Virus record (IMG/VR): IMGVR_UViG_3300047994_000374
Coordinates: 330,193 to 394,192 of that record
Strand: one strand, 5' to 3'
DNA length: 64,000 nucleotides
Both the position numbers and the translations under genes were made by a program. Below, one piece after another: positions 16,364 to 63,720 of this stretch; position 1 is the first letter of the stretch; the number at the start of each line of letters is the position of its first letter. The notes beneath the pieces are model-generated. The model ran no database searches and was not told the DNA's origin. It saw nothing but the letters and a program-made list of their open reading frames with translations.

Positions 16364-16672
16364 TCATAAAAAATTTTGAATCTTCATTAAGCTTAAAATA
16401 ATTTTATCTGCTTTATTTAAATTTTCTTTTGTAATATATTCTTGATCTAATTTAAAATTTAATCCAGTTTTATTTGTTAATTTAATTATATTCATTGACT
16501 TAATAAATGTATAATTTGTTTCTGATTCAACCTTGTCACGAATATAAATTGAAAGTCGAACGATTTCTCCATCTACATCAAAATCAATAAAAGTGCAGAA
16601 ATTAGAACAATAATTAAATCTATTGTAATTTTCGCTTATTTTATTTCCACAATAACAATATAAATCAATCAT
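16364..16672 (-). CDS. hypothetical protein, C-terminal xFx-tail family
   Basis: N-terminal CYC..., ends LMKIQNFL. Confidence 0.7.
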   Translation of the reverse strand: MIDLYCYCGNKISENYNRFNYCSNFCTFIDFDVDGEIVRLSIYIRDKVESETNYTFIKSMNIIKLTNKTGLNFKLDQEYITKENLNKADKIILSLMKIQNFL

Positions 16673-17148
16673 TAGATAAATGACATTAGTTTTTTAAGTC
16701 TCGGATCTAAATGTTTATCATCAATTGCAAACCCAGGATTATTTGCAATGAATTTCATAATCTCTGTTTGACAAGCCGCAAGCATTTCTTCTTTGAATTG
16801 ATTATGTTTTAAATTGAATGCAAGTCTTGAGAAAACCATCATCCTTTGTCCTGCCGCATTCTTTTTCCATGTATTACGAACTAATTTATTTCTTTTAGGT
16901 GCAGAAAAGACTTTCGTGGTTTCTGTCACACCATTAAAAATAAAAGACACGTCGCAGTAAGGAAATACATAGAGCCCCCAAGTATCTGCTTGAAATTCTA
17001 AACCAGTGTATTTAAGATTAACGGTCTTACAGTTTATTTGTCCATAAGAGTTTATTTTCGCATCAGGAAATTCTTTTTGAACAGCTTTTAATTTTGCTAC
17101 TTTGAATTCTAAATCATTGATAACAGATAACAATTGGGTAGTGGTCAT
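16672..17148 (-). CDS. hypothetical protein, C-terminal xFx-tail family
   Basis: Ends LKKLMSFI; layout similar to 22548..23057. Confidence 0.75.
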   Translation of the reverse strand: MTTTQLLSVINDLEFKVAKLKAVQKEFPDAKINSYGQINCKTVNLKYTGLEFQADTWGLYVFPYCDVSFIFNGVTETTKVFSAPKRNKLVRNTWKKNAAGQRMMVFSRLAFNLKHNQFKEEMLAACQTEIMKFIANNPGFAIDDKHLDPRLKKLMSFI

Positions 17149-17199
17149 ATACTTTCCGTTGGCGTTTAATATTGCCTAATTATTATATATCAAGTGTTT

Positions 17200-17415
17200 T
17201 TATTCTTCATCAAAAATTATTTTAGTTCTATTTTGGTGGCCGTGTATAAATAGCGCATCGTCCAAACTATGATATATGTTAATACTTGAGTGAGATCCAA
17301 TCCAACGAATAATGATTTCGCCTGTATCACAAATTAGACATCCCTCCGCTACAACCCCACATCCACTAACCCCCGAGACGTCTTCGTGACGATACATCTT
17401 AAACGTTTTTAACAT
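17200..17415 (-). CDS. small conserved phage protein
   Basis: RHEDVSGVSGCGVVAEG...RW...HGH pattern recalled from other phage proteins; function unknown. Confidence 0.7.
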   Translation of the reverse strand: MLKTFKMYRHEDVSGVSGCGVVAEGCLICDTGEIIIRWIGSHSSINIYHSLDDALFIHGHQNRTKIIFDEE

Positions 17416-17483
17416 GATAAGCCTTTATTTAGCGACTTGACTTGCTAATAAAATACGAAACCTTGCACCCGTCATATATCAAA

Positions 17484-18065
17484 TCAAATGTGTTCTGGAT
17501 CACAATCATACAATTTACAGAATTGTTTTAAGTCAGTTGGCGTGATATTGTCTGATCCAGCCTCAATTGAAGGATACATCAAAGTTCCAATTCCATCGAT
17601 TCCTGTTGCGTGCGATAGGCCTAAATAATGTCCCAATTCATGCTCCACAACTGATTTATAATAATCCTCTGTCATTCGATCCGTTACTAAATAGATATAA
17701 GGCATAAATGAAGAATTGTCATATAAACCCAAAGTGCTATGCTCATTTTGAGCATCTACCATCATAATTTTAGGATAATCTTCGGAAACCTTTAGAATTA
17801 TTAAAGAATTTTTGGTATCCAAATGATCTGTTGGAAGCTTTTCGATAGTAAATTGAACCTTATGATTTGTAGCCCATTCCCACTCTTCTGCTGCTTCTTG
17901 AATAGTATCTACTTCCCATGGCGTCATACTTTGGTCCAAATAAATAGATGTCTTTACGGGCAGTTTATGAACAACAGGATGGTAGAGTATCGGGACTGAT
18001 ACTTGGAATAGAACGAGCATTACGATTAAACTGCCAACCATTGACCAAAATAATATTCTCATCAC
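17484..18065 (-). CDS. membrane-anchored metzincin (matrixin-like) metallopeptidase
   Basis: N-terminal TM; HELGHYLGLSH zinc motif; Met-turn LMYP. Confidence 0.85.
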   Translation of the reverse strand: MMRILFWSMVGSLIVMLVLFQVSVPILYHPVVHKLPVKTSIYLDQSMTPWEVDTIQEAAEEWEWATNHKVQFTIEKLPTDHLDTKNSLIILKVSEDYPKIMMVDAQNEHSTLGLYDNSSFMPYIYLVTDRMTEDYYKSVVEHELGHYLGLSHATGIDGIGTLMYPSIEAGSDNITPTDLKQFCKLYDCDPEHI

Positions 18066-18083
18066 ATCTTATATATCAGTAAA

Positions 18084-22547: not shown

Positions 22548-23057
22548 TTAACTAAAATTTAGAATTCTCAACAAACTATCTGGCATATTCTTTTTTGTCA
22601 CATCATCAAGATCTACGTTTTGAAAATAACGAACAAGTTCTTCTTTAATTTTTGTTTTGACTTCTTGCGAAAAATTATTTTTATTTAAAACTTCTTCATA
22701 ATTAAAGAAATCCATAGGCTCTGTATGATATATATTACTATAAATGAATAACGAAATTAGAGAAGGAATGGTTGAAATGCCTTCAGCCTCATATTCTTTA
22801 CACTCTTCACAATTCAAATCGTCATAGTAAATGCTAACACAAGCCATTGAATGATCTCCGTAATGCTGCACCTCAAATGATATGGCATTAGCAATTGAAT
22901 TCACGCTCGGACTTGATAAATACTTAAATCCATTAGCGCCAGTCATTAATTTCAGATCGTCGTATTTTTCAAGCCATTCTTTCATGTGCTTGGTTTTATG
23001 ACATTCTTGAGCAATATATTTTTTAGTTTCGTCATTCATCTTGACAAATCTAATCAT
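22548..23057 (-). CDS. hypothetical protein, C-terminal xFx-tail family
   Basis: Ends LLRILNFS. Confidence 0.7.
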   Translation of the reverse strand: MIRFVKMNDETKKYIAQECHKTKHMKEWLEKYDDLKLMTGANGFKYLSSPSVNSIANAISFEVQHYGDHSMACVSIYYDDLNCEECKEYEAEGISTIPSLISLFIYSNIYHTEPMDFFNYEEVLNKNNFSQEVKTKIKEELVRYFQNVDLDDVTKKNMPDSLLRILNFS

Positions 23058-25324: not shown

Positions 25325-25648
25325 TCAAAAAGAAACCGATTTACCGCATCCGCAAGTAGATTTCGCGGCAGGTATATTAAATTTAAATCCAGATGAAATC
25401 ATACTGTCAAAGTAATCAATGACAGTTCCCTCAAGATACTGAAGGGAAATGGGATCGCAAATTATTTTAATGCCATCTTGTTCAATAACTTCGTCAGTAT
25501 CTCTAATGTTCGTTTCAAATGACATATCCTGGGAAAAACCAGCACATCCATTTCCAATTAACTTTACTCGAACGGATTTATTTTCAATACCCTCCGATTC
25601 AGCAATTTCATTTAATTTTGCTATAGCTTTTTCTGTTAAAGTAATCAC
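25325..25648 (-). CDS. A-type Fe-S cluster carrier (IscA/ErpA/HesB family)
   Basis: ITLTEKA, GCAGF, D..SL.YL.G..IDY, CGCGKS. Confidence 0.92.
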   Translation of the reverse strand: MITLTEKAIAKLNEIAESEGIENKSVRVKLIGNGCAGFSQDMSFETNIRDTDEVIEQDGIKIICDPISLQYLEGTVIDYFDSMISSGFKFNIPAAKSTCGCGKSVSF

Positions 25649-25974
25649 GCGAATGCCTTTAATTTTAATAATTTTTCAATTATATTTTTGTTGGTGTCGT
25701 AATCTTTTCCCGGAATCATAAAACCTATACTTATCAATAGATTGGGCTCATAATCAAAAGAAGTTATAATTGAAAGCCTTGTGTAACCTGTAGCTTCTAA
25801 AGCATTAGAACCCCATAAAATATACTCTTCATTTCCAATTGTAATATGAAAAGTATAACCATTATTGATCTCATCATACCAATTTGATTGACAATTATCA
25901 CACACCCTTACTTTGTCAAACGAAAACGAATTTCCTCTTCTAACATCATCTTTATCACAAGCAGGGCAGTTCAT
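25645..25974 (-). CDS. zinc-ribbon protein, C-terminal KAFx family
   Basis: CPAC...CDNC; ends LLKLKAFA. Confidence 0.75.
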   Translation of the reverse strand: MNCPACDKDDVRRGNSFSFDKVRVCDNCQSNWYDEINNGYTFHITIGNEEYILWGSNALEATGYTRLSIITSFDYEPNLLISIGFMIPGKDYDTNKNIIEKLLKLKAFA

Positions 25975-26261
25975 ATGAATGCCTGCAAGCTTAATAATCT
26001 ATCAATCAATTTAATATTTTCTTCGTATGTTTCGCCAGGATTTACATAATAATTGAGCGATAAGTTTATTTTATCTTCACTTTCAATTAAAACCCAACAT
26101 TGTAAAAATGTTATTCCGCCATCTCTACTCTTGCTTGCACTTATAGTTTGAATTCCGTTAGCTACTTTTAATGTCAAGTTGTAAGAAGCATAATTAGCTC
26201 CATGTCGAAATATATATGAGTAGCATTTTTTACATTGAAATCCATTAAGCAAAACATCCAT
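25971..26261 (-). CDS. CxxC protein, C-terminal xFx family
   Basis: CKKC; ends LLSLQAFI. Confidence 0.7.
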   Translation of the reverse strand: MDVLLNGFQCKKCYSYIFRHGANYASYNLTLKVANGIQTISASKSRDGGITFLQCWVLIESEDKINLSLNYYVNPGETYEENIKLIDRLLSLQAFI

Positions 26262-26293
26262 TTCATTTTAATCAATACATGCTGGACACAACA

Positions 26294-27412
26294 TCATTCA
26301 CCAAATCTTACAACATCTTCATCATTGACACCAGCGGAAGTAAAAGCTATTGGTGTATTGCAATATCTTTCAACATACTTTAGGAAAGGTTTGATTTCTT
26401 CTTTATTCATGCCGTCATTCCACCCAAGTAAATCAATATATCCTGGTTCAATTTCTTCAAAATCTCCAGCTGAATTTACTTCTTTGTTATAAGAATTGCA
26501 TACACGAATAAATTTATTGCCATTCATGATATCAAGCTTGGACATGAGGATATGCGTAATTCCAGATTTTTTAATACCGTATTTGGACATAGGGAGATCT
26601 AAATAACCAATTCTTCGATCACGGCCGGTCGTCGCACCCTTCTCGCCGCCCGCTAATTGTAATGCAGAAGCTTCCTCTCCATGTATCTCTGTGATCATCT
26701 TTCCATTACCGCTCTTGGTTAGGTAGGGCTTTCCTGCGCCATAAACCCTGTCTAAATCAACGAAATGAAATCCAGATGAATAGATACCTGAAACCGTACA
26801 ATCGCTACTGGTGACGAAAGGATAGTCAATACCGACTGATACATCAATTGCTGACCCTTGAGAACCTTCAAACACCAAATTACTTTTTTCAAATTCTTCT
26901 TGCATTTTTAGAACTGGAATGAACTGAACACCAAGTTCTTTTAACTTTTCAATTACAGTAGCCTTATCTCGAATCAAATGGTAAAGACGAGTTCCAGTTC
27001 GACCAAATTTACTAATAGCAGCAGGTCCAACGCCCTTATTTGTTGATCCAATGTGTTTATTTTTTTCTTTATCTTCTGCAATATGTGCTTCGGTAATAAC
27101 AAATGCATCAGGGTCTACGATAATTGTTTTACCAACTCCAGGAAAATCTTTTGAGAATCCAAGAATCTCTTCCAAAAGTTCGTCAGGGTTAATATACATT
27201 CCATGCCCCAAATAAGACTTGATATTAGGGTTTCGATAATCAGCACTGGGTAAAATATGATGCGTATATTTCTTTCCATCGCGCCAAATCACATGACCAC
27301 AATTTCCAGCACCACTCGTTCGAATGACATAATCAGCATCCTTCGAAAAATAATGCGCCCAACGACCTTTTCCATTATCGCCCATTAAAAAATCAAGAAC
27401 TGCAATTTTCAT
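26294..27412 (-). CDS. purA: adenylosuccinate synthetase (short form)
   Basis: GDNGKG, GNCGH, IGST.KGVGP, EGSQG, YPFVTSS, GATTGR.RRIG, KLD. Confidence 0.88.
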   Translation of the reverse strand: MKIAVLDFLMGDNGKGRWAHYFSKDADYVIRTSGAGNCGHVIWRDGKKYTHHILPSADYRNPNIKSYLGHGMYINPDELLEEILGFSKDFPGVGKTIIVDPDAFVITEAHIAEDKEKNKHIGSTNKGVGPAAISKFGRTGTRLYHLIRDKATVIEKLKELGVQFIPVLKMQEEFEKSNLVFEGSQGSAIDVSVGIDYPFVTSSDCTVSGIYSSGFHFVDLDRVYGAGKPYLTKSGNGKMITEIHGEEASALQLAGGEKGATTGRDRRIGYLDLPMSKYGIKKSGITHILMSKLDIMNGNKFIRVCNSYNKEVNSAGDFEEIEPGYIDLLGWNDGMNKEEIKPFLKYVERYCNTPIAFTSAGVNDEDVVRFGE

Positions 27413-30971: not shown

Positions 30972-32702
30972 TTAAGCGCGAATCTGCATTACCCTACCGA
31001 ACGGCGGCGTGAAATCAATGTAGCCAGAAGTAATAATCCAATAAACATCAATACCTGGATCGCGCATATTGGCTACATCTTGCATATCCAAATAGCCATC
31101 TGTAAGAACAATCAAAAAATCACATTTACCAATTTCTTTTTCATAATCAGCAAAGAATGGGCTCCAAATAGTTCCTCCGCGTCCCTTCGGAGTAATTTTT
31201 GATAATTCTTCTGGTTTGCAGGTTTTAATTTTTAACGCATCATTCCAATAAATTTCGGAATCGGCGCATACTAAGGTTCCTTCAGCCCTATCGTCGAGAC
31301 TTTGTAGTTGAGAAATTCCAAATGCCATGTCTTCTTGACTCATGCTTCCACTTGTATCCAAAAGGCATCCGAAATTAACACTGTAGCTTTTGCGCTTTGG
31401 ATTCATGAGACCTACGAACATAGGGCGACTCTTGAAACGATTCCAGTCATTACGACCATTACCGTTCTTTGCTCGTGAGACTCGTCCACGGAGAACGTCT
31501 TGCCAAGTAACTTTTGGTGCAGTTAATTTACCAAGTTCATCTTCGAGCCCAGCGGGAATGTGGCCTGCCATTTCTTTTGCGGTGCGCATAGCATCCGCGA
31601 GGCGTTTGGCAAGTTTATCTTCACTTTCTTCAGTATCCATATGTTCATCGACTGTGCCACCTCCATTGATCCCAAAAATGTCATAGCCTTCGCCACAAGA
31701 ATCGCAGCTGCCACAACCTTCTCCCGGTTGATCACCTTCTTGCCCATCACCTTCGCCGTTTTCACCAGGCTGATTTCCATGGTCTGGACAATCACACTTC
31801 TCACCCTCACCATGTTCGTGTTGATCGGATTTATCTCCGCCCTCGCCCTTATCACCTTTTTCTTTTTTGTCGCCCTTATCCCCTTTATCTCCAGCTTCGG
31901 CTTTATCGCCTTTACCCTTTGATTTATCTTTACCCTTATTTTTCTGTGGCTTTTGGTATTTACCAACACTTCCACACTTGGGGCACTTTGGAAGAAGATT
32001 ATAAAGGAACTCGTAAATCTTTTCAGGACGCTTCATATCGCCCTCAAGATCTGGATCAGCAAAAAAGAACTTAGTATTCTTTTCTCGCTTCTCAAGTTCT
32101 TGAATTTCTTTTTCGGTCAATTCACGATCTTCGTTTGGTTTTGGAAGTTTGAGCGTAGGATCTGTCGTATCAACAGCATTTGGATCGACATCTTCAAAGC
32201 CTGCAATTTTCTTGAAAGGATCTTTGAGCATTTCGGCATAATTCGCCAAGGTCATATATCGACCCAAATACTTAGTAAAATACTCTTTAGGATCCAATGA
32301 TCGTGCTCTCAAGTCTTCCATAACCATGCCATTGACAATATAATCAACAGCAATGTTCCAGAGCTTCGGAAGTCGACTGCCTCTTCGTTGAGGATGCATA
32401 TAGATTGCGTGCCATGCTTCGTGAGCCGCAATCAAACGCAATCCGATGGCACTTTGCTTTAAAACGAACTTTGGGTTCCAATAAAAGCGTTTTCCATCGG
32501 TTGCGGCAGTTGGCATACTTAAAGTGCAAATATGCTGAACTGGATACATCAGGCTGAAAATAAAACAATCGCCGCCCATTCCTGAGCCAACATTTGTATT
32601 ATTATATCTTGTAGCCAGATCGAGAAACATTTTTGAAAGTTTCACTTCTGCAGCAGCTACAAGCTTTTCATCGACTTTACCAAGAACTTTTGAGAATTTC
32701 AT
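30972..32702 (-). CDS. DUF2201-type metallopeptidase-vWA protein (MoxR partner)
   Basis: TAATDG, HEAWH zincin, WNIA.DY.VN; low-complexity GDK/Cys linker; MIDAS DTSGSM, GRGGT, TDGY. Confidence 0.88.
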   Translation of the reverse strand: MKFSKVLGKVDEKLVAAAEVKLSKMFLDLATRYNNTNVGSGMGGDCFIFSLMYPVQHICTLSMPTAATDGKRFYWNPKFVLKQSAIGLRLIAAHEAWHAIYMHPQRRGSRLPKLWNIAVDYIVNGMVMEDLRARSLDPKEYFTKYLGRYMTLANYAEMLKDPFKKIAGFEDVDPNAVDTTDPTLKLPKPNEDRELTEKEIQELEKREKNTKFFFADPDLEGDMKRPEKIYEFLYNLLPKCPKCGSVGKYQKPQKNKGKDKSKGKGDKAEAGDKGDKGDKKEKGDKGEGGDKSDQHEHGEGEKCDCPDHGNQPGENGEGDGQEGDQPGEGCGSCDSCGEGYDIFGINGGGTVDEHMDTEESEDKLAKRLADAMRTAKEMAGHIPAGLEDELGKLTAPKVTWQDVLRGRVSRAKNGNGRNDWNRFKSRPMFVGLMNPKRKSYSVNFGCLLDTSGSMSQEDMAFGISQLQSLDDRAEGTLVCADSEIYWNDALKIKTCKPEELSKITPKGRGGTIWSPFFADYEKEIGKCDFLIVLTDGYLDMQDVANMRDPGIDVYWIITSGYIDFTPPFGRVMQIRA

Positions 32703-32733
32703 TTAGATCCTATATTCTATATATCGCGAAAGA

Positions 32734-33885
32734 TTATGAGTTAGTTCCGTTAATTGAATCGTTGATATCGTTGATAAACTTCTTCCAATCAGGATGCTCA
32801 TCGAGATTGTGCGTAACGATACGTTGTGGCTGAATTTGACTACGGATCGTAATCAGCAACATCTCATGATCAACATTTTGGAAAAACTTACCAACATGCT
32901 TGAGCGACGCAGGGTGCTCAGTTGATTTTGCCGCGTCCAATTGATTTGCCAAACGGCTGCAGGTAATCATGCAAGTGACGAGTTGTTTGGTGCGCTCGAG
33001 AGCCTTATATTCTTGAAGGACGCTTTTTCCCTTAAAGATATCCTCAACCATTGGAAGAAGCTGACGATAGTGCTCGTAGTAATTTGCATAACGAAGACCA
33101 ACAGACTTACCAACGCAACCAGAAACCTTTGCATTGAGAAGTTCGGTGCTTGCATTCTTTTCTTCACCTTTAAAAAGAATGTTTGAAGAGCGGTGCCAAC
33201 CACGAGGCGACGGATCCGCATAACGATCATCGGGATTTACTTCACCAAACAAATCTTGAGGGTGATCATAAATATAAGTGGTAATGGCAGGGTGAATATT
33301 GCCTTCCTTACCTGCCCACTCGAGCCACGACGAAGCATCTGGCGAAACCAAATACTTTTCTGCGCGGTCAAGGAGTGGAAGTGAAGGACGCGAGCCACCT
33401 TCTGAAATCAAATTGCCCGTCATAATAACTGACTTGAGATTTGGAAGTTTATTTCCGTTGATCGTCTTAAATTGGGTGAATTCAAGAAGCGGAGCCCAAA
33501 GTGAGGGATCTGCCTTATCAACTTCGTCAAGAAGAGCGACGACGTCTTTTGCCCCCTTTCCTTCCGTAAACATAGGCTCGTAAAACTTTGGAAGAAGATA
33601 ATCAACGAACTTCTTCTGTTGCTGTGCTGCCATTACATTTGGAAAGCCACCGAGGTCAACGCGTTCCAAAACTGAAAGATTGATATAAACCTCATGACAA
33701 CCCGACTTTTTAATTTCTTGCTTTGCAATTTCCGTTTTTCCTGATCCTCGACGACCGAAGACGGCGATATTTTCTCCAAAGGTAATACTGGAGGCGATAT
33801 GCTCGGATAGTTGCTTGGTAGTAAGCTTCTCCATGTTGAAATCGGAAACTGACATCGAGGTTGAGTCATCTTTTGCTTTTGCCAT
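32734..33885 (-). CDS. MoxR-like AAA+ ATPase
   Basis: GRRGSGKT Walker A, LLDEVDKA Walker B, TGN, PLLDR, PSPRGW; adjacent to the vWA gene. Confidence 0.9.
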   Translation of the reverse strand: MAKAKDDSTSMSVSDFNMEKLTTKQLSEHIASSITFGENIAVFGRRGSGKTEIAKQEIKKSGCHEVYINLSVLERVDLGGFPNVMAAQQQKKFVDYLLPKFYEPMFTEGKGAKDVVALLDEVDKADPSLWAPLLEFTQFKTINGNKLPNLKSVIMTGNLISEGGSRPSLPLLDRAEKYLVSPDASSWLEWAGKEGNIHPAITTYIYDHPQDLFGEVNPDDRYADPSPRGWHRSSNILFKGEEKNASTELLNAKVSGCVGKSVGLRYANYYEHYRQLLPMVEDIFKGKSVLQEYKALERTKQLVTCMITCSRLANQLDAAKSTEHPASLKHVGKFFQNVDHEMLLITIRSQIQPQRIVTHNLDEHPDWKKFINDINDSINGTNS

Positions 33886-34030: not shown

Positions 34031-34395
34031 TTATAAAAAAGCTTTAACTTTTGCAAGTTTTTCTACTAAAATGATTGCGTCGGAAGGATCTGTAAATGTA
34101 TCGTTTGAATATAAACGAGCAAGCATATGGGTTGCCGTCTTTTGATATACTTCGGTTGCATTATTTTTAATAAATAAACTTTTCTTCCAAACCCTAACTT
34201 CATAGTAAATTTTATTGGAAGAAAATCTTAAATGAAACCAATTAATAATTCCATCTTCAAGACCAAGTATTTGTGAGTCAGAACATTCGATATCTGATTA
34301 AAGAGGCTGTCATTGGTGAAATGGGAAATCTTTTCTTTCCAATCCTTACTCAATTCGACAAAATGAAACGACAAACAAAATATTAAATAACTCAC
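34031..34395 (-). pseudogene. disrupted member of the C-terminal KAFL family
   Basis: Stop-free frame 34297-34031 ending EKLAKVKAFL*, with no ATG/GTG/TTG near its 5' end; upstream part is in another frame (the 34228..34416 ORF). Confidence 0.55.
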
Positions 34396-39925: not shown

Positions 39926-40510
39926 TTATTTATGCTTTCGAGATTTCTTAACAATTTTCTTTTTTGAACCAGCTTGAAACATAATAACATATGGCGGTCG
40001 AACTCCTCCACTAAAATTTGTAGCCGCTTCTAATGCCAACTTAACTCGTTCAGCGGGTTTTAAATTTGATCCTTCAGTTGCGAAAAAACAGCCCTTTGAA
40101 TATACAGCACCACATCCGGCAGCATCATAAGCGGCGGCACTCATACCAACCTGATAATCACCCATGATGTTATAAAGTACGCCTTTATAGCCGACTAAAA
40201 AATTGCCGCACTGCGTCGCATCCTTATCACCAAAGCCATTTTGCGAAAAACATTTACGAAGTTCATCAACAAAGTCCGTTGTCATATATTGAAAATCTTC
40301 TTGATGAACTGTTTGAGCTGGCGGAGAAAATTTGAAACGAAGAATATTTAACATACGAAATGAACTTGTCCCTCCAATAAGAAACGGTCCATTTTGAAAA
40401 ACTTTCGGATCTGTTCTAACTGTAATGTCCAGTCCAGCCACGCCTGCGGAATCCGCTCCGATGAATAAATCACCGGTTTGTTTATCTACTAGTCCAACAA
40501 TTGCTGTCAT
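39926..40510 (-). CDS. Ntn-hydrolase, HslV/proteasome-beta-like peptidase
   Basis: N-terminal nucleophile M-T-A-I-V-G, GADS, PKVF, A.GCGA, AL.AA. Confidence 0.75.
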   Translation of the reverse strand: MTAIVGLVDKQTGDLFIGADSAGVAGLDITVRTDPKVFQNGPFLIGGTSSFRMLNILRFKFSPPAQTVHQEDFQYMTTDFVDELRKCFSQNGFGDKDATQCGNFLVGYKGVLYNIMGDYQVGMSAAAYDAAGCGAVYSKGCFFATEGSNLKPAERVKLALEAATNFSGGVRPPYVIMFQAGSKKKIVKKSRKHK

Positions 40511-40514
40511 GATT

Positions 40515-40787: not shown

Positions 40788-40793
40788 AAGAAT

Positions 40794-48046: not shown

Positions 48047-48325
48047 TTATGAGAAGTTTAGAACTTTCTGTATTTTATTAATAACGCTTTTATCCGTAAA
48101 GTCAAGGTCAATGATAACATATCCGTCTGCCCTATCAAATCTAATATGCAATTTCTTCTCTGGAAAGACATAAGTCCAATGATCAGTCCAAGCAGAATAA
48201 ACTTCATCAGACTTTACAAAATATGTAAGACAATCTTTAAAACATTTTAATTTATATTCGTAAGCATAAAACCAACTCTTAATTAATTCTTTATCACAAA
48301 CAATGCAATGAGTAGGGATATTCAT
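48047..48325 (-). CDS. zinc-ribbon protein, C-terminal xFx family
   Basis: CIVC...C...C; ends IQKVLNFS. Confidence 0.72.
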   Translation of the reverse strand: MNIPTHCIVCDKELIKSWFYAYEYKLKCFKDCLTYFVKSDEVYSAWTDHWTYVFPEKKLHIRFDRADGYVIIDLDFTDKSVINKIQKVLNFS

Positions 48326-48624
48326 TAAAATACAACAATCGTTTTCAGTTTATTTAAAATATTTTTATTATCGATATCTAATTTAATTCTCAATGTATCA
48401 ACTCGTAATTCTACTCCACTCACTCGGCGCCAGGATAACAAATCATTCTCTAAATTATAATAGAAGTTAATTCCGTCAATTTTAAATCCCAAAGCATATA
48501 ATTCACCAGCAAAAAAATATTTAATACAATTACCGCAATCACAAACTCGACCAATTATCTCAACATTTATACTTGTCTCTTCATCTTTTGTAAAACCACT
48601 ATCACAGCTTGGACAGGTTTTCAT
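48325..48624 (-). CDS. zinc-ribbon protein, C-terminal-tail family
   Basis: CPSC...CDCGNC; ends LKTIVVF. Confidence 0.72.
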   Translation of the reverse strand: MKTCPSCDSGFTKDEETSINVEIIGRVCDCGNCIKYFFAGELYALGFKIDGINFYYNLENDLLSWRRVSGVELRVDTLRIKLDIDNKNILNKLKTIVVF

Positions 48625-49346
48625 GAGAAATTAATAATCAATTGAAGCTTTTGTTCCAATTTATTTCCACGAAGCTTTAAAATGCCAATAGGGTCTATGT
48701 CAATTTTAAAACATTGGGGCGAAAAATATTCAATAGTTTTTTCATCTAATCGAACTGTTGTCATTAAATTATACTCCGGATTAATAAATACGTGAGTAAT
48801 TTCGCCACCATGATTTAAAATAGCAACAAATAAATGATCTTGTAAATAATTACTCGCCTTCTTACTACATATATATTCTTGCCGCTCTTTATCTAATTTT
48901 AATTTAGATTTGCAAATAATACATCGATTATCAACCAACTCCATAAATTCATTTTCAGTCATAAGAATGCTTTTATACTCTGAAATTTTTTTTCTAAATT
49001 TTTTACAATCTTTAATAATTTGTGGAAGACTTGTTGATTTGAATAGGGTGTTTTTAATTTCTATCGAAGGCGTTTCTCTAAACATATCTTCAACGATAAT
49101 AGTAGGATCACCAAAAGTATAGTTCATCCATATGTGCTTGTCAAGATTATAAAATATTCGATAAGGAGGGTTTAATTTATTTTCATCTGTAGAAACGATA
49201 CAAAATCTATAATACTCTGCCTCATCCCCTAAACATTGATCTTTTCTTTTGCAATAAACTCCATATCGAGAATCGTCTTGTGAATATGTTATTTCCATTT
49301 GCGATTCACAAAATGGACATTTTACTTTCTCAACATCTGTAATCAT
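48621..49346 (-). CDS. two-domain zinc-ribbon protein, C-terminal xFx family
   Basis: CPFC and CIIC units in tandem; ends LQLIINFS. Confidence 0.75.
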   Translation of the reverse strand: MITDVEKVKCPFCESQMEITYSQDDSRYGVYCKRKDQCLGDEAEYYRFCIVSTDENKLNPPYRIFYNLDKHIWMNYTFGDPTIIVEDMFRETPSIEIKNTLFKSTSLPQIIKDCKKFRKKISEYKSILMTENEFMELVDNRCIICKSKLKLDKERQEYICSKKASNYLQDHLFVAILNHGGEITHVFINPEYNLMTTVRLDEKTIEYFSPQCFKIDIDPIGILKLRGNKLEQKLQLIINFS

Positions 49347-49726
49347 ATAAAAGCCTTTAAATTATTTACTTTATCAATTAATTTTTTACATAAAGCAATG
49401 ATACTTTCGACATCATAAACAATTTCTCCAATATCTTTTGGAAAAGAATAATCTTCAGAAATTGGTATAATTCGATTGGTATTTGTTTTAGTAAAAGACT
49501 TTAAAACAAACGTCCTACTATTAAGTGAAACGACAAGCCACACATCTGTTTCAATATAATAATTTACTTTAATTTCATCATCATAATTATTCGGACAAAA
49601 GATACAAAAACGGTAATAACCAGACCTAGTGCATCCGTCACCGCACATATAAGAAGTTCTACTTGAGTTAGCAATGAATTCATGATTACAAAATGGACAC
49701 CGCGCGTTTTTCGTATTCGATATCAT
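49343..49726 (-). CDS. zinc-ribbon protein, C-terminal KAFx family
   Basis: CPFC, YYRFCI shared with 48621; ends VNNLKAFI. Confidence 0.75.
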   Translation of the reverse strand: MISNTKNARCPFCNHEFIANSSRTSYMCGDGCTRSGYYRFCIFCPNNYDDEIKVNYYIETDVWLVVSLNSRTFVLKSFTKTNTNRIIPISEDYSFPKDIGEIVYDVESIIALCKKLIDKVNNLKAFI

Positions 49727-50034
49727 AGAAAAGCTTTCATTTTTTTAATTCTACGTAGTTTATTTATGATATCTTTGTCAGTAAAATCAAGCCCGGCGAT
49801 TTCAAAACTATAGTAGTAATCACCACGTTCGATCATAATAGATAGAAGTCCTCTACTATAACTAAATCGATCATTATCAACATATAAGACTGAAGTGTAA
49901 ATAGAATTGTCTTTAATGAAAATTCTAAATGACGAATGTTGAAAATTTACACATTTTATATGGTAGAACTGACTTTCCGGGTACTCTTCTTTCTTAACCA
50001 TATTACCAAAACAAACTTTACAAATCATATCCAT
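49723..50034 (-). CDS. zinc-ribbon protein, C-terminal KAFL family
   Basis: CKVC; ends IKKMKAFL. Confidence 0.75.
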   Translation of the reverse strand: MDMICKVCFGNMVKKEEYPESQFYHIKCVNFQHSSFRIFIKDNSIYTSVLYVDNDRFSYSRGLLSIMIERGDYYYSFEIAGLDFTDKDIINKLRRIKKMKAFL

Positions 50035-50035
50035 T

Positions 50036-50374
50036 TTAGAGAAGTCCTTGTAATTTTGACATTCGGATTAAAAATTTATCTACTTTTTTCATCATATCTT
50101 GCGCTGGTATATTAAATTTTTTGTTTCCAGGATTAAAAAGATCGTCGAGAAAATTAAGTTGATAGTAGAACCGCACGCGATCTGCTATATTTGTTTCCCG
50201 GTCCGCATAAATAATAATTAATCCTTGACCTTTTGATGTATTTAAGTTGTTAAAATCTATATCAATACTCCATTGGTATAATTCGGCCCGCGTCCATGTT
50301 ATTATGTCTGGACCATTTGTTATACAAGACCAATCATTAAGCAAAATGTTTTGATTAAATTTTATTCTTGCCAT
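50036..50374 (-). CDS. hypothetical protein
   Basis: 112-aa ORF in the array; ends MSKLQGLL. Confidence 0.7.
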   Translation of the reverse strand: MARIKFNQNILLNDWSCITNGPDIITWTRAELYQWSIDIDFNNLNTSKGQGLIIIYADRETNIADRVRFYYQLNFLDDLFNPGNKKFNIPAQDMMKKVDKFLIRMSKLQGLL

Positions 50375-50375
50375 T

Positions 50376-50774
50376 TTAAGTAAAAACTTCTATTTTCTTA
50401 TATCGCTTGTATATTTCTTTGCACGCCTCAACCATTTGGCATAGTGTATTTAATTTTCCGTTGTATTTCGAAGATAAAGTTCCGGAAAGTAACGGTTCAT
50501 ATATATCTTTCCAAATTACAAATTTTTTGCCCTTTAAAAAACAAAATGTTTTATCACCTACATAATATTGCAATCCGTCTTCAGTCAGACAACAATTGTA
50601 ATAAGTACCCGATACACAAGATGGATTATCTTTCTCGGACCAACCATTAGAGCTTTCACAATAATATGCACCCCTTTCTTTATTAAATTTAAAGGGAGAG
50701 CCTCAAAATGGACAGTCTTCATTTTTAATAATGTTGTCCCACTTTATTCTATCAGCTTTTGTTATTTTATTCAT
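50376..50774 (-). pseudogene. zinc-ribbon family gene with in-frame TGA at codon 24 (CPF*); nonsense allele or recoded
   Basis: ATG 50774, 23 codons to TGA at 50705-50703, then the frame continues into the 50376..50573 ORF; 132 aa ending KKIEVFT. Confidence 0.65.
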
Positions 50775-57265: not shown

Positions 57266-58555
57266 TCATTTCTTTTTCTTGCCAGGGACTGTAATCTCCT
57301 GACCTGAAAGATCAAAAAATCCATCTGCTTTCCAAATGAATTCTCTTGGACGATCTTCCAAACGTAACAAGAACGCTGCCGAAGGCAGCGATTGTTCATG
57401 ATTACAACTTGCGTTGTAATCCGCATCTGTCTGAAAGTGACAGTGTTTACAACTGAACAACTTACCTTTGCGGTTCTTGCTACTTACATAACCACATGAT
57501 GAACATCGTTGAGAACGAAAAGCAGAGCTTTGCAGATTCACCTGGACGCCAGAATCTTCTGCATAGTTCATGAGCTTCTCTTGGATCAACATTTCACCAA
57601 AGTAGTTTAAATACTTACCTACATTCTTTCCTTTCCTGAAGTTACTTATTCTTTCTAAATTAATCTGTTTTACATCTGATAGATTTAACTGCTTTACAGA
57701 CCACCCAATAAAATTATCTCGATGTGCAAGGGCTTTGTGAAAGGCTTTCAAGCCTTTCACTTTATGAGATATCTTCTTGCAGATGGTATCTATGGTATGT
57801 CCATGGACATCTTGTGGAGTAGTCTGCTTGTCTGATAAGCTAATACATGTTTTCATACCTGTATCTGCACCTACAATTTTACCTGATGTTTTAGATGGAA
57901 CCTTCGTTATTTCATAACGAAGAGCAATGGTATCTTTTTCAACCTGAAAGGACTTCAAAAGATTACCTTTTTCTTCAAGCTTTCTGGAATGTCTTGTATG
58001 CTTGATGGGAAGTATAATCTTGCCAAACTTTTTACCTATGGAAGATAAAGTAATCACTCCATCAAAGTAAGAGATGTCTTTTGCATCTTGATAATTGCAG
58101 CAGATGGAATTTAACTCTGGAAAGACATGAGAAAGATCAGGCTTGATAAGCTTTGCTTTGAGCAATTTCTTCGAAATTGCCCGAGTTCTTTTGCCTTGAG
58201 ATTTGAACTGTTCAAGTACATAAAGAAGTCTTTTTCGTTTCGTAATATGTGCAAAAACAATACCTAATGCTTGAGTAGCTGCACATTTTAAAGCTCGTGC
58301 AGAACATGGAGTTTGAAATGAGATGTTCTTGGTAGATAAAAACATAGGGCAATCAAGAAGATCATGTTGAACATCAAGAACCTTCATACCTGATTTTGTT
58401 TTGAAAGAAATCTTGTTATTCCAAAGATAATCTACACAATAAGAAACAGCTTTTTGATATTCTTGGATGAAAGATAATAACATATAATGCTTGTCGGAAT
58501 TGCATTCCGCCAAGCTTAACTTGGATGATTTTATTTTTCTTCCTTTATTTTTCAT
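57266..58555 (-). CDS. tnpB: TnpB RNA-guided nuclease
   Basis: RuvC-I VGADTG, RuvC-II NLE, zinc finger SQRCSSCG...FSCKHC, RuvC-III DADYNAS. Confidence 0.88.
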   Translation of the reverse strand: MKNKGRKIKSSKLSLAECNSDKHYMLLSFIQEYQKAVSYCVDYLWNNKISFKTKSGMKVLDVQHDLLDCPMFLSTKNISFQTPCSARALKCAATQALGIVFAHITKRKRLLYVLEQFKSQGKRTRAISKKLLKAKLIKPDLSHVFPELNSICCNYQDAKDISYFDGVITLSSIGKKFGKIILPIKHTRHSRKLEEKGNLLKSFQVEKDTIALRYEITKVPSKTSGKIVGADTGMKTCISLSDKQTTPQDVHGHTIDTICKKISHKVKGLKAFHKALAHRDNFIGWSVKQLNLSDVKQINLERISNFRKGKNVGKYLNYFGEMLIQEKLMNYAEDSGVQVNLQSSAFRSQRCSSCGYVSSKNRKGKLFSCKHCHFQTDADYNASCNHEQSLPSAAFLLRLEDRPREFIWKADGFFDLSGQEITVPGKKKK

Positions 58556-59126
58556 GTAGTAGTAATATTTTTTTGATTTTATCAGCTTTATTTTTTGCTC
58601 TTCTTAAACCATAAATACGACAACAAAAAGAGGTAATAACAGAAACTAAATCTTTCATCAAATCTTCTTTATCCTCTTTTACTTCATTCATCACCAAAAC
58701 TTGACAGTTTAATTTAGCTAACAAGTTTTGAAGATAGGTAAAGCCAAATCTGGTAAGTCTATCCTTATTCTCTATAATAAGCATAGTAGGAGATAAGTCA
58801 AGCATCTTCCAGAGCTGTTGTCTTTTATCATTCATACCCGATGCAACCTCTTTAAAGACTTTGTGGACTATAATGCCTTTTGCTGCGCAAAAGTCTTCAC
58901 ATCGTTTTACTTGATAATCTAATTCTTTTTTTCTTGACTGATTCGATACTCGTGCATATATTACATTTTTAGTATTCGAAGAAGATATAGGGTTGATGAT
59001 TTCATCATCAACCAAAATAGTTCCAGAAGGAGTTTGGCGTGCATTAGGAATGCTTTTCGCTTTAAACCAGCGAAAAGCCGTAATATAAGAGATACCTTGT
59101 TTTTTAGCCCATTGACTTAGTTTCAT
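58545..59126 (-). CDS. tnpA: IS607 serine recombinase/transposase TnpA
   Basis: MKLSQWAKKQGISY.TA.RWF wHTH, IYARVS, EVASG, DRLTRFGF, DL..DLVSVITSFCCRIYG.R. Confidence 0.93.
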   Translation of the reverse strand: MKLSQWAKKQGISYITAFRWFKAKSIPNARQTPSGTILVDDEIINPISSSNTKNVIYARVSNQSRKKELDYQVKRCEDFCAAKGIIVHKVFKEVASGMNDKRQQLWKMLDLSPTMLIIENKDRLTRFGFTYLQNLLAKLNCQVLVMNEVKEDKEDLMKDLVSVITSFCCRIYGLRRAKNKADKIKKILLLHEK

Positions 59127-61626: not shown

Positions 61627-61639
61627 CGAACCCTACTTA

Positions 61640-62608
61640 TTATAGAAGACTATTTATTTTCTTGACAAAGTCTCTATAAACATTCGGATCAATTGGCAGT
61701 TTAGATGTATGCTGCATGTTTAATGTTTGAAAATTTTCTCGAAGCATTTTTTTATTCACATTATAGTAGGATAAAAACGCTCCATTTTTCGGAGAAGTGT
61801 CAATTAATTTATCGTGGTGGTGAATGGCGATATATGGATTTCCAGTCATTTCAGCCAATACAATGCCATGAAAACGTTGAGTGATGATTGCATCGAATTT
61901 ACCCAAGTAAGATGCTGTATCTTTAAAGGTAAGTGTATTTGGAGTAACGGAGCGTTTATGATTACGATGGTCCATATGTGCGATAAGCTCAGCCGTAGCC
62001 AAATCGTCATGAGTATCGTTAGATTGGCACATCGACATGAACTTAATATCGCATTTTTGATCCGATACAAGCCAATCCAAGAACTGACTAAATTCTGATT
62101 TGAAATAAGCCCAAGCCGCATGTTGCCAATGAGGATCAGAATATCTTGGTACTACGCTTACATTGGGCAGAATTAATACCGAGTTCTTATATTTGTTGGG
62201 ATTAGGTTTAACTTGTGATTGAAGCGCATAAACCAAATCAGGAACGAACTCTGTATTGGGATTAATGGCTTTTAACTTGTCAATTGCCCCCGGCGAACGA
62301 CAGGCGATGTATTGGGCTTTGGATATAAGAAGCTGATGCGTAGCTCCAATGTCTGTTTCTCCACCAACGCCCATATAAAATATCTTCTTTTGCTGAAGAA
62401 TGGACAAAGCATCTGCATCAATCTTTGGTTCGGCAAATAAAAATGAGCCACCACCAAAGAAAACGGCATCAACATGTGCTATATTGTCTTTCGTAATACA
62501 ATCAGTGAATGTAAAAGTAAAGTCAGGAAACAAATGTTGATATGCTTCTATAAAGAATTGGTCCCCAAAATTTTTCTTAAAAAAGAAACCCCAGACTAAA
62601 ATTTTCAT
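61640..62608 (-). CDS. polysaccharide pyruvyl transferase family protein
   Basis: GFF...NFGD, GGGSF, GVG, R, PDLVY, RFHG.VLA...P.IAI....K. Confidence 0.85.
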   Translation of the reverse strand: MKILVWGFFFKKNFGDQFFIEAYQHLFPDFTFTFTDCITKDNIAHVDAVFFGGGSFLFAEPKIDADALSILQQKKIFYMGVGGETDIGATHQLLISKAQYIACRSPGAIDKLKAINPNTEFVPDLVYALQSQVKPNPNKYKNSVLILPNVSVVPRYSDPHWQHAAWAYFKSEFSQFLDWLVSDQKCDIKFMSMCQSNDTHDDLATAELIAHMDHRNHKRSVTPNTLTFKDTASYLGKFDAIITQRFHGIVLAEMTGNPYIAIHHHDKLIDTSPKNGAFLSYYNVNKKMLRENFQTLNMQHTSKLPIDPNVYRDFVKKINSLL

Positions 62609-62613
62609 AACGA

Positions 62614-62874
62614 TTATTCTTCGTTATGAGCGAAAGTTTTCCAGCTTATCTCGCGAACGTTCGATACATGCCACTTGATAAGAAGGATGTATTTTCCTGA
62701 TGCCGTAGAGCGAACTTCATAACGAAGGTCATCTTCATGTCTTGGTGAGCATGGTGGGACATTCAGGTTATCAGTGAATTTAACTTCAACACGACGTGGA
62801 AAATGATGCAATTCAATTCGAACCGTATCTTTACCCGCAACAATTAATTCTCCAGCCTGCATACAAACCTCCAC
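62614..62874 (-). CDS. hypothetical protein (start probably MQAG after GGAGG)
   Basis: 86-aa ORF; SD precedes the internal ATG. Confidence 0.65.
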   Translation of the reverse strand: MEVCMQAGELIVAGKDTVRIELHHFPRRVEVKFTDNLNVPPCSPRHEDDLRYEVRSTASGKYILLIKWHVSNVREISWKTFAHNEE

Positions 62875-62924
62875 ATAATATTAAACTTTATCTAATATTA
62901 TGCAGGGATATGCCGTCAAGGAGT

Positions 62925-63215
62925 TTAATTTAATACAGCGACAACGTTTTCTTCGCGCAAAACCCAAAGCTTATCATCACCGCTCTTCACTTCAATAGCC
63001 AAAGTCTTATTGAAAAAGATTTGATCTCCAATTTTAACTTCAAGTGGAATAGATGCGCCGGTTGAGCTTAACTGCCCGCTACCAACCGCTACAACCGTCC
63101 CACGCACCATCTTGTCAGTTCCATTGGTTCCTGGAATGATAATGCCTCCTGCGGTCGTTTCTGCCTCTTTAACAACACTTACAGCCAAGAAGTCTCTGAT
63201 TACTTTAATGCTCAT
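62925..63215 (-). CDS. groES: co-chaperonin GroES
   Basis: TTAGGIIIP mobile loop, GTVVAVGSG, VKIGD, LRE..V.A. Confidence 0.9.
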   Translation of the reverse strand: MSIKVIRDFLAVSVVKEAETTAGGIIIPGTNGTDKMVRGTVVAVGSGQLSSTGASIPLEVKIGDQIFFNKTLAIEVKSGDDKLWVLREENVVAVLN

Positions 63216-63309
63216 TTGTTTTCTTTCCTTTATCTCTTTATTAGGTAAATTATAATCGACAGCAATGCCAACAATAGTAATATATCAGCGGTGTATTTTT
63301 CTTTATTAC

Positions 63310-63720
63310 TCATTGGAATGCCTTTATCTTATTTAATTTGTGGCAAGTTTTAATTACTTCACAAAGGGTATCAACTTGTCCCTCGACTGATCCATAATTC
63401 AATGTTGCTTCTCTTACGGGATATCCCATGGGATCTTTAAATAAATCTGTTATCATAGGGAAACCATTAAATTCTGTCATTCTAGCAGGATACACCGAGT
63501 CCTGTGAAATGATCTCGTTATCACTATTTCTAAAGCAATGAAACAGTTCTATAATTATTGTGTTTTTAGAAACTTTTGTATTGTAAAGTTCAATTCTAAC
63601 CAAATAATCTTTTAAATAAATTTTAAAAACTACTCGTGTCCAATGTTCAATAAAATTGGTTATCTGCTTACGAAAATAAATCAGATCTAATTTATCTTGA
63701 AAATCGTAGCGAATATCCAT
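63310..63720 (-). CDS. hypothetical protein, C-terminal KAFx family
   Basis: Ends LNKIKAFQ; TTGACA promoter upstream at about 63749. Confidence 0.72.
   Translation of the reverse strand: MDIRYDFQDKLDLIYFRKQITNFIEHWTRVVFKIYLKDYLVRIELYNTKVSKNTIIIELFHCFRNSDNEIISQDSVYPARMTEFNGFPMITDLFKDPMGYPVREATLNYGSVEGQVDTLCEVIKTCHKLNKIKAFQ

What the first reader, a model, noticed from the sequence alone, without database searches (positions are those of the whole stretch)
16364..63720. About 20 dispersed small proteins share a C-terminal (K/R)-(L/M/I)-x-(A/N/V/S)-F-x-COOH tail
Seen: tails KIQNFL (16364), KLMSFI (16672), RILNFS (22548), KLKAFA (25645), SLQAFI (25971), KVKAFL (34031), KLSAFM (35309), KMKAFL (42644, 43347, 49723), KLEAFL (43012), RMQVFL (43700), KVLNFS (48047), LIINFS (48621), NLKAFI (49343), KIEVFT (50376) and KIKAFQ (63310), plus looser variants. 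Most start with a CxxC zinc ribbon, have highly divergent middles and occur in tandem arrays (42644-44053, 48047-50774). Inference: a constant basic amphipathic helix ending in a penultimate Phe on variable bodies suggests a docking or sorting tag for one shared partner, i.e. a diversified adaptor or effector arsenal. Analogies from established biology are the proteasome HbYX motif, the HslU C-terminal RFIL tail that binds HslV, and T4 clamp-binding tails. The window encodes an Ntn/HslV-like peptidase and MoxR AAA+/vWA proteins as candidate partners.
Basis: partly seen in the sequence, partly recalled or inferred. Interest (0 to 1): 0.75.

Follow-up and report, generated by a model that had tools for sequence, protein, structure and literature searches.

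The report
Shared Phe-x-end tail on phage proteins
About one in seven genes of this 394-kb soil/moss jumbo phage, and many genes in its relatives, encode small fast-evolving proteins that all end in the same short helix with a phenylalanine exactly one residue before the end, a conserved constant region on variable bodies whose binding partner, if any, is still unknown.

Summary
All 17 listed tails are at the stated coordinates. Genome-wide (394,192 bp virus record), Phe is at position -2 in 105 of 621 ORFs (17% against 4.7% background, p about 1e-29). A strict tail pattern occurs 74 times against 1.6 expected. The constraint is on the protein: synonymous codons match genome usage, and in orthologs tail codons have near-normal pS but 2.5-fold lower pN. 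The tail is the end of a 13-17-residue helix, [RK]-h-x-[KR]-[LIM]-x-[AGST]-F-x-COOH, as conserved as the zinc ligands. About 60% of carriers form one zinc-ribbon superfamily of full-length homologs. At least four other families (A, D, F, G) have no detectable body homology yet carry the same tail. The tail persists in distant metagenomic homologs and in related jumbo phages up to 481 kb. There is no Pfam, PHROG, PDB or AFDB match. My best reading is a constant C-terminal helix built into each small fold that also serves as a common docking or assembly surface. A purely structural core helix is nearly as likely. No partner was identified. The HslV-like peptidase, ClpP, MoxR/vWA and tubulin are clade core genes and do not track tail load.

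The parts
16364..16672 (-). 102-aa tail-bearing ORF, ends ...LMKIQNFL; outside the zinc-ribbon superfamily by profile
16672..17148 (-). 158-aa tail-bearing ORF, ends ...KKLMSFI; no zinc ribbon, no Pfam/PHROG family
22548..23057 (-). 169-aa tail-bearing ORF, ends ...LRILNFS; no zinc ribbon, no Pfam/PHROG family
25645..26261 (-). Two ATGA-overlapped zinc-ribbon family members (109 aa ...KLKAFA; 96 aa ...SLQAFI). The 109-aa protein is the one modelled.
34031..34258 (-). 5'-truncated remnant of a zinc-ribbon family member that keeps ...KLAKVKAFL; aligns to residues 35-109 of foreign homolog P0082
34743..35093 (-). 116-aa zinc-ribbon family member with a variant tail ...KVKLLRVWG (Trp in place of Phe); conserved in relative L028
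35309..35755 (-). 148-aa tail-bearing ORF ...KVLKLSAFM; its ortholog in L028 is 48% identical in the body but 86% identical in the last 14 residues
42644..44053 (-). Tandem array of four ATGA-overlapped tail genes (123, 112, 118, 117 aa; ...KMKAFL, ...KLEAFL, ...KMKAFL, ...RMQVFL); orthologous array in L028
48047..50573 (-). Tandem array of seven small genes. Five have the canonical tail (48047, 48621, 49343, 49723, 50376). One ends at the Phe (48325-48624, ...KTIVVF). One has Leu for Phe (50036-50374, ...KLQGLL).
63310..63720 (-). 136-aa tail-bearing ORF ...LNKIKAFQ; no zinc ribbon, no family hit
39926..40510 (-). HslV-family Ntn peptidase (PHROG 1040, E 1.6e-15), begins Met-Thr.
30972..33885 (-). 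vWA-like/metallopeptidase (DUF2201_N + DUF2201) and a MoxR-like AAA.

Best explanation
The tails are the last residues of a 13-17-residue C-terminal helix with consensus (from -12) h-h-x-[RK]-h-x-[KR]-[LIM]-x-[AGST]-F-[LSTI]-COOH. This helix is the constant region of a huge, lineage-specific arsenal of small early/accessory proteins in a clade of soil and moss jumbo phages. Each protein is a small, mostly beta-rich, fast-evolving body (a zinc ribbon plus beta-sheet in about 60% of cases; other bodies in the rest) capped by this helix. I infer that the helix does two jobs. Its hydrophobic stripe (-12, -8, -5, -1 plus Phe -2) packs on the body and completes the small fold. The invariant Phe-x-COOH end and the conserved basic residues (-9, -6) form a common surface through which all these proteins meet one shared partner or assembly, while the variable bodies bind different targets. 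Shown: enrichment, protein-level selection, strict register, helical prediction, presence on bodies with no detectable homology, and conservation across the clade. Inferred: packing geometry, the existence of a shared partner and its identity.
For: Phe at -2 in 105 of 621 ORFs; the strict motif occurs 74 times against 1.6 expected. Synonymous codon use at motif positions resembles genome usage, with TTC over-used for Phe. In six ortholog pairs the tail codons have pS 0.26 against 0.33 for the body, but pN 0.049 against 0.124. In the 108-sequence family alignment the tail columns carry 2.1-4.1 bits, like the zinc ligands (3.8-4.3) and unlike the middle (0.3-1). Members defined only by tail-trimmed body profiles end in h-x-x-F-x in 87% of about 200 sequences. 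Families A, D, F and G have hhalign probability of at most 0.7% to the zinc-ribbon superfamily and to each other when tails are trimmed. With tails on, the best alignments fall on the last 15-30 columns. Family D bodies are MORN-like hairpin units, which suggests a different scaffold. Foreign homologs of Z (91 representatives) and of A (P0111, P0112) keep the tail at 15-30% body identity. Related phages have arrays with Phe at -2 in 26/33, 23/37 and 17/28 ORFs; there the other tail positions drift but F-x-COOH stays. AF2 predicts a terminal helix as the best-modelled element in both Z (residues 92-108, pLDDT 83) and A (56-68, pLDDT about 77). The tail genes are real genes under purifying but relaxed selection (dN/dS 0.15-0.45 against 0.04-0.11 for neighbours).
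Against: No partner was identified, and co-occurrence does not single out any candidate. In the largest family the helix looks like an ordinary core element of a compact domain, which alone could explain much of its conservation. Tail flavours are family-specific (KLKAFL, DPKLKAFT, DITxxRLxxLxxFS, EEFxxxLKLKAFW), as expected if tails co-evolve with their own bodies. The small families have few members, so failure to detect body homology is weak evidence of non-homology. The AF2 models are of moderate (72) and low (64) confidence, and coordinates could not be inspected for burial. The helical hydrophobic moment is not exceptional.
Confidence: 0.45

Rival explanations
1. Purely structural: all carriers descend from one ancestral small protein (beta body plus C-terminal core helix) that expanded and diverged beyond recognition. 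The helix is conserved only because it is the hydrophobic core of a minimal fold, and there is no shared partner.
For: About 60% of carriers are demonstrably one superfamily by body homology. AF2 gives a compact domain whose only helix is the tail. The family alignment shows alternating conserved hydrophobic strand positions, which I read as facing the helix. Tail flavours track families. Tandem duplication explains the arrays.
Against: Families A, D, F and G show no body relation at all, and D has a MORN-like scaffold. The C-terminus sits exactly one residue after Phe in 87% of body-defined members at 15-25% identity, whereas termini of ordinary families usually vary. The basic positions -9 and -6, which by simple helical-wheel geometry flank rather than lie in the main hydrophobic stripe, carry 2.6-3.3 bits.
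Confidence: 0.33
2. Protease-linked tag: the Phe-x-COOH tail docks into, or is recognised by, the phage's orphan protease cores (the HslV-like peptidase or the two ClpP paralogs, neither with a cognate unfoldase in the genome) or by a host unfoldase. The small proteins would then be adaptors, activators or timed-turnover substrates. This is a specific version of the docking idea and the reader's favoured one.
For: A penultimate aromatic plus a free carboxylate resembles HbYX and the HslU tail (established knowledge, from memory). The genome has an HslV-family peptidase with an N-terminal Thr and two ClpPs, and no ClpX-type AAA_2 above threshold. The HslV-like gene lies next to a tail array and this synteny is kept in L028.
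Against: These proteases are equally present in tail-poor G001. Known HbYX and HslU tails sit on hexameric ATPases, not on monomeric 100-aa proteins. No binding computation was made for these pairs.
Confidence: 0.1
3. Membrane-targeting helix: the basic, hydrophobic C-terminal helix works like the MinD or FtsA membrane-targeting sequence and brings the proteins to the inner membrane.
For: Net charge +1.7, several Leu/Ile plus Phe, helical prediction. Relatives have even more hydrophobic ends (...YLLFS).
Against: The hydrophobic moment is unremarkable (0.33 against 0.26). Membrane-targeting sequences tolerate variable C-terminal extensions, whereas this register is fixed. AF2 places the helix confidently, with pLDDT higher than is usual for a free terminal helix.
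Confidence: 0.06
4. Translation-level signal: the last roughly 12 residues act as a nascent peptide at the stop codon, or the underlying RNA acts directly, to promote termination-reinitiation on the ATGA-overlapped downstream gene.
For: The register to the stop codon is strict. Tail genes overlap the next start by ATGA in 58% of cases against 13% for other small early genes (OR 9.3, p = 6e-13).
Against: 42% of tail genes are not overlapped and keep the tail. The association follows from tandem duplication of whole gene units. The motif has helical periodicity, which a nascent arrest peptide would not need. Synonymous sites in tail codons diverge almost as fast as in bodies (pS 0.26 against 0.33), and codon choice is not fixed, so an RNA-level signal is excluded.
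Confidence: 0.04

Closest known systems
Lineage-specific expansion of small zinc-ribbon proteins in jumbo phages (about 35 copies in Bacillus phage G; Iyer et al. 2021, PMC7824862)
   Same: Dozens of tandem small zinc-ribbon paralogs in a jumbo phage, function unknown.
   Different: No sequence match to cultured phages. Here the defining feature is a C-terminal Phe-x-COOH helix that also occurs on bodies without a zinc ribbon. The text searched in that paper mentions no such tail (the term 'C-terminal helix' does not occur in it).
HbYX motif of proteasome activators and the HslU C-terminal tail that docks into HslV (from memory)
   Same: Hydrophobic-aromatic-any-COOH at the extreme C-terminus with a fixed register; an HslV-family peptidase is encoded nearby.
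   Different: The aromatic residue is Phe, not Tyr. The carriers are about 100-aa non-ATPase proteins rather than AAA+ rings. No docking was shown. The peptidase is present regardless of tail load.
MIM1 C-terminal helices of ESCRT-III proteins that bind the MIT domain of Vps4, consensus (D/E)xxLxxRLxxL(K/R) (from memory)
   Same: A family of paralogs shares a C-terminal helix. The pattern L(-12)xxR(-9)L(-8)xxL(-5)K(-4) of the Z tails fits the MIM1 core.
   Different: The tails carry an extra A-F-x end. No MIT-domain protein was recognised. The phage's classical AAA ATPase has an N-terminal region that, by my reading, looks Bcs1-like (not formally tested). The resemblance may be a generic heptad pattern.
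Poxvirus ankyrin/PRANC (F-box-like) families and other viral adaptor arsenals (from memory)
   Same: Logic only: variable target-binding bodies joined to one constant C-terminal docking element for a single hub.
   Different: No homology, a much shorter constant element, hub unknown, bacterial virus.
Bacterial short C-terminal motifs: MinD/FtsA membrane-targeting helices, FtsZ C-terminal peptide (D-I-P-A-F-L-R-K), beta-clamp motif QL[SD]LF, PIP box (from memory)
   Same: Short hydrophobic/aromatic C-terminal elements; [LI]-x-[ATS]-F-L resembles the I-P-A-F-L core of FtsZ and the h-x-x-F-h core of PIP boxes.
   Different: The flanks are basic rather than acidic (unlike FtsZ). There is no Gln at the clamp-motif position. 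No match to the two clamp profiles tried. These are leads from memory, not tests.

Membership tests
Any curated protein family (Pfam-A, PHROGs) | Significant profile match | tested here: not met
   The window tail proteins scanned have no Pfam hit above cut-off and no PHROG hit. Larger tail proteins from this genome and G002 also have no Pfam hit above cut-off. PDB sequence search gave best E 0.08 over the zinc knuckle only.
Zinc-ribbon fold | Two zinc knuckles (CxxC ... C/H ... C/H) in a small beta structure | tested here: met
   C3 and C6 are invariant; C25 and a His at about position 26 are nearly invariant in the 108-sequence alignment. AF2 gives N-terminal beta hairpins. This holds only for families Z/E/H (about 60% of carriers) and locally for B and C.
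HbYX / HslU-type protease-docking tail | Penultimate aromatic residue with a free C-terminus in fixed register | tested here: met
   Phe at -2, one residue before the end, in 59 of 146 loose-motif sites and in 87% of body-defined members; the residue is Phe rather than Tyr.
HbYX / HslU-type protease-docking tail | The tail is carried by a ring-forming AAA+ unfoldase or dedicated activator | tested here: not met
   Carriers are 65-240-aa proteins without ATPase domains.
HbYX / HslU-type protease-docking tail | The tail inserts into inter-subunit pockets of the peptidase | not tested
   No complex of a tail with the HslV-like or ClpP proteins was computed. Co-occurrence is uninformative.
Beta-clamp / PCNA / gp45 binding motif | Consensus QL[SD]LF or Qxx[LIM]xx[FY][FY], and a clamp to bind | tested here: not met
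   The position equivalent to Gln is K/R or hydrophobic. No gp45 C-domain or DnaN domain-3 match in the genome. The host clamp is unknown.
MinD/FtsA-type membrane-targeting sequence | Strongly amphipathic terminal helix, tolerant of terminal extensions | tested here: inconclusive
   muH(100 degrees) is 0.33 against 0.26 for random 13-mers; 29% of random segments reach the tail mean. The register is fixed, unlike known membrane-targeting sequences.
ESCRT-III MIM1 / MIT system | C-terminal LxxRLxxL[KR] helix plus an MIT-domain AAA ATPase partner | tested here: inconclusive
   The pattern fits positions -12 to -4. The only classical AAA protein found (PF00004) gave no MIT hit. Its N-terminal region was judged by eye only.
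ssrA-like ClpX C-degron | Terminal Ala-Ala-COOH or close variant | tested here: not met
   The last two residues are F-[LSTI].

The most novel reading that the evidence does not exclude
The Phe-x-COOH helix is a portable docking or sorting tag specific to a clade of tubulin-, ClpP- and HslV-encoding jumbo phages. It would recruit up to about 90 diversified early proteins per genome to one hub (for example an orphan phage protease core or a phage-built assembly). That would make it a bacterial-virus counterpart of eukaryotic-virus adaptor arsenals, readable directly from the sequence.
Probability: 0.3. Interest if true: 0.85.

Novelty: new variant of a known kind. Interest (0 to 1): 0.62.

Why it matters
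Jumbo phages carry hundreds of small genes of unknown function. Here a single six-to-twelve-residue C-terminal signature ties together about 15% of the genes of one phage and comparable arrays in relatives, including proteins with no other detectable similarity. If the tail is a docking or sorting element, it defines at a stroke a whole effector set and gives a simple experimental handle (tail peptide, F-to-A mutant, one-residue extension) for finding the hub. If it is only a structural core helix, it is still a clean example of how a minimal fold diversifies while keeping one element and an exact terminus, and it provides a sequence marker for annotating this uncultured phage clade.

Tried and rejected
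(1) Nucleotide-level signal (promoter, RBS or recombination junction under the tail) was rejected: codon choice at motif positions resembles genome usage, and synonymous divergence in tail codons is near that of bodies.
(2) Chance was rejected.
(3) Homodimerisation of a zinc-ribbon member through the tail: the complex-prediction job returned 'no answer' (score 0.01, controls not run). This is not evidence either way.
(4) Fold assignment: Foldseek against PDB, VIA-align across PDB representatives and Foldseek against AFDB clusters gave nothing significant (best Z 5.0, best E 0.13). The weak look-alikes are generic beta-sheet-plus-helix proteins such as p32/Mam33 and levivirus coat proteins.
(5) The ESM Atlas gave only unnamed viral clusters below the trust threshold.
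(6) Partner by co-occurrence failed: all candidates are clade core genes.
Searching with the HslV-like protein found no relatives by that method.
(8) Family D had no outside homologs.
(9) Cultured-phage collection: no DNA match and no family match.
(10) Literature: no description of this tail was found.
(11) TAG recoding by the suppressor tRNA: no sign of it.
(12) Chimallin-type nucleus-forming phage: the seven large proteins scanned gave no RNA-polymerase or chimallin hit; this was not an exhaustive test.

Full report
SOURCE AND CONTEXT. The window is the last 64 kb of a 394,192-bp, 36% GC virus record (one contig, CheckV completeness 92%). Near-identical DNA occurs in moss and soil metagenomes. 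There is no DNA match among cultured phages, and the UvrD-like helicase is at most 34% identical to any of them. The genome encodes a portal, a terminase with a LAGLIDADG insert, DnaB, RNR, a Pol III alpha in two pieces, a PhuZ/TubZ-like tubulin, a trigger factor, two ClpP paralogs and an HslV-family peptidase. It also encodes a MoxR-like AAA next to a vWA/metallopeptidase protein. A portal search finds more than 100 related IMG/VR contigs at about 70% identity, up to 481 kb. The phage therefore belongs to a sizeable uncultured clade of jumbo phages.

CHECK OF THE OBSERVATION. The one at 34031 is the end of a 5'-truncated family remnant. The signal is far beyond chance and is not confined to the window. 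Phe occupies position -2 in 105 of 621 crude ORFs (17% against a 4.7% Phe background, binomial p about 1e-29), and in 22 of 97 window ORFs. A strict pattern occurs 74 times at the C-terminus against 1.6 expected from its internal frequency. An extended pattern occurs 41 times at the C-terminus and only 5 times elsewhere. The register is fixed: 59 of 146 loose-motif sites have exactly one residue after Phe. The carriers cluster at 0-60, 80-110 and 340-394 kb; almost none lie in the rest of the genome, which holds the portal, terminase and most large genes.

PROTEIN OR NUCLEIC ACID? Codon choice at the motif positions resembles the genome's, although TTC is over-used for Phe (TTT/TTC 50/50 against 74/26; four Ala codons, five Leu codons and both Lys codons are used). 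An 8.9-kb syntenic relative (L028) allowed ortholog comparisons. Tail genes have dN/dS of 0.15-0.45 against 0.04-0.11 for neighbouring housekeeping genes. In the last 14 codons, pS is 0.26 (body 0.33) while pN is 0.049 (body 0.124). One ortholog pair is 48% identical in the body and 86% identical in the tail. The constraint is therefore on the amino-acid sequence, and the ORFs are real genes.

ANATOMY OF THE TAIL. It reads -12 L/F/I, -11 L/I/V, -9 R/K (71 of 92), -8 L/I/Y/F, -6 K/R, -5 L/I/M (87 of 92), -3 A/T/G/S, -2 F, -1 L/S/T/I, and a Pro is common near -19. In a 108-sequence alignment of the main family the tail columns carry 2.1-4.1 bits. That equals the zinc ligands (3.8-4.3 bits) and far exceeds the middle of the protein (0.3-1 bit). 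AlphaFold2 on that alignment gives an N-terminal zinc ribbon, a sheet of about seven strands and a single helix, residues 92-108 of 109. The helix is the most confident part (pLDDT 83; overall pLDDT 72, pTM 0.58). No solved or predicted fold matches significantly.

ONE FAMILY OR MANY? BLASTP on tail-trimmed sequences leaves most carriers as singletons. Iterative profiles on tail-trimmed sequences, enriched with relatives, merge families Z, E and H into one zinc-ribbon superfamily. It has about 200 sequences, roughly 50 of them from this genome, and 87% end in h-x-x-F-x even though the tail played no part in defining membership. Six smaller families stay apart. A, D, F and G have hhalign probabilities of at most 0.7% to the superfamily and to each other. 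B and C share only a 12-18-column zinc knuckle with it, and in C that knuckle sits at a different position. With tails left on, the best inter-family alignments fall exactly on the last 15-30 columns. Family D bodies are MORN-like hairpin units. Family A is modelled, at low confidence, as an N-terminal helix, a hairpin and the C-terminal helix. Outside homologs of A at 25-28% identity keep both its N-terminal motif and the tail. On a foreign contig, two 75-78-aa proteins without a zinc ribbon sit next to two zinc-ribbon members, and all four carry the tail.

BEYOND THIS GENOME. The family profile finds 91 foreign representatives among 1.84 billion proteins, nearly all 90-120 aa, starting M-x-C-P-x-C and ending in the tail. 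Related jumbo phages have arrays in which 26 of 33, 23 of 37 and 17 of 28 ORFs have Phe at -2. In those arrays the preceding residues drift (for example K-x-K-x-Y-L-V-F-S) while F-x-COOH stays. Whole-genome figures are 9.5% for the complete 481-kb relative G002 (background 4.3%) and 5.7% for the 83%-complete G001 (background 4.5%).

WHAT IT DOES. No direct evidence exists. Three features point to a constraint outside the individual body: the identical element on bodies with no detectable homology, conserved basic positions that by helical geometry flank the main hydrophobic stripe, and an invariant distance to the free C-terminus. One feature points to an ordinary structural role: in the main family the helix is the only element that can cover the sheet. 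I therefore favour a dual role, a fold-completing helix that also presents a constant docking or assembly surface (confidence 0.45). The purely structural reading is close behind (0.33). Candidate hubs could not be ranked. The HslV-like peptidase, both ClpPs, trigger factor, tubulin, MoxR, the vWA-peptidase and an AAA ATPase are all present in tail-rich G002 and tail-poor G001. No match to the gp45 clamp C-domain or DnaN domain 3, and no ClpX-type ATPase above threshold, was found. A translation-coupling role was considered because tail genes overlap the next start by ATGA in 58% of cases against 13% for other small early genes. However, 42% keep the tail without any overlap, and tandem duplication explains the association. 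Resemblances to HbYX/HslU tails, ESCRT-III MIM1 helices, the FtsZ C-terminal peptide, clamp motifs and MinD-type helices are recalled from memory and are leads only.

VERDICT. The family is undescribed in the libraries and papers searched, but it fits the known pattern of lineage-specific expansions of small zinc-ribbon proteins in jumbo phages (PMC7824862). What is new is a clade-wide Phe-x-COOH helix shared with bodies of no detectable homology.

Noticed in passing
window 3511-3585 (-): A tRNA with anticodon CUA (amber suppressor type; ARAGORN labels it tRNA-Pyl). TAG ends only 29 of 621 crude ORFs, and read-through beyond TAG gives short extensions (median 9 codons), so there is no sign of TAG recoding.
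   Followed up: partly
G000 301989-307108 (outside the window; loci L024/L025): The Pol III alpha gene is in two pieces (897 aa and 417 aa). The piece ends look like a split intein (the second piece starts with a C-intein-like segment ending ...SN|SHS). A 391-aa Cys-rich ORF lies between them.
   Followed up: partly
G000 327782-328901 (just upstream of the window; L026): Two adjacent bona fide ClpP paralogs (E about 1e-46), with no ClpX-type ATPase detected in the genome. A trigger factor gene lies at 308.5 kb and a classical AAA ATPase at 322 kb. All are conserved in relatives G001 and G002.
   Followed up: partly
G000 154822-156240 (L017): A PhuZ/TubZ-like tubulin gene (Pfam Tubulin E 3e-13), conserved in relatives. 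The seven large proteins scanned gave no RNA-polymerase or chimallin hit.
   Followed up: partly
G000 40431-40919 (L002 11435-11920, -): A 162-aa ORF carries the tail twice (internal ...KLKAFF and terminal ...KLKAFW). The junction is a run of eight T's; one T fewer would give a stop right after the first tail and an ATG close behind. It is therefore a homopolymer frameshift, real or a sequencing error, that fuses two tandem family D genes.
   Followed up: yes
window 34031-34258 (-): A family member lacking its zinc-ribbon N-terminus (open frame without a start codon until 34126). It is probably a decaying copy that still keeps the tail.
   Followed up: yes
G000 280071-283031 (L023): The large terminase (986 aa) contains a LAGLIDADG-type insert, probably an intein or homing endonuclease.
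   Followed up: no
window 57266-59126 (-); also G000 25394-26427 and 99719-100183: A 429-aa ORF overlaps a 193-aa ORF, and both have paralogs elsewhere in the genome, including two identical 154-aa copies. By my reading of the sequences alone this looks like an IS607-like serine-recombinase/TnpB pair. A separate cluster of four 374-393-aa TnpB-like paralogs also exists.
   Followed up: no
window 40794-42647 (-) and 4517-5269 (-): A DUF444 (YeaH-like) gene, 98% identical to its ortholog in relative L028 but absent from G001 and G002. Next to it is a Thg1-like gene (Pfam Thg1 on the L028 ortholog) that has a paralog at window 4517-5269.
   Followed up: partly
genome-wide: Tail genes are linked to the next gene by a 4-nt ATGA start/stop overlap in 58% of cases against 13% for other small early genes. 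49 of 90 tail genes are followed by another tail gene.
   Followed up: yes
window 44075-45292 (-): A Kelch-repeat beta-propeller protein (405 aa) directly upstream of the four-gene tail array, conserved in relatives at about 38% identity.
   Followed up: no
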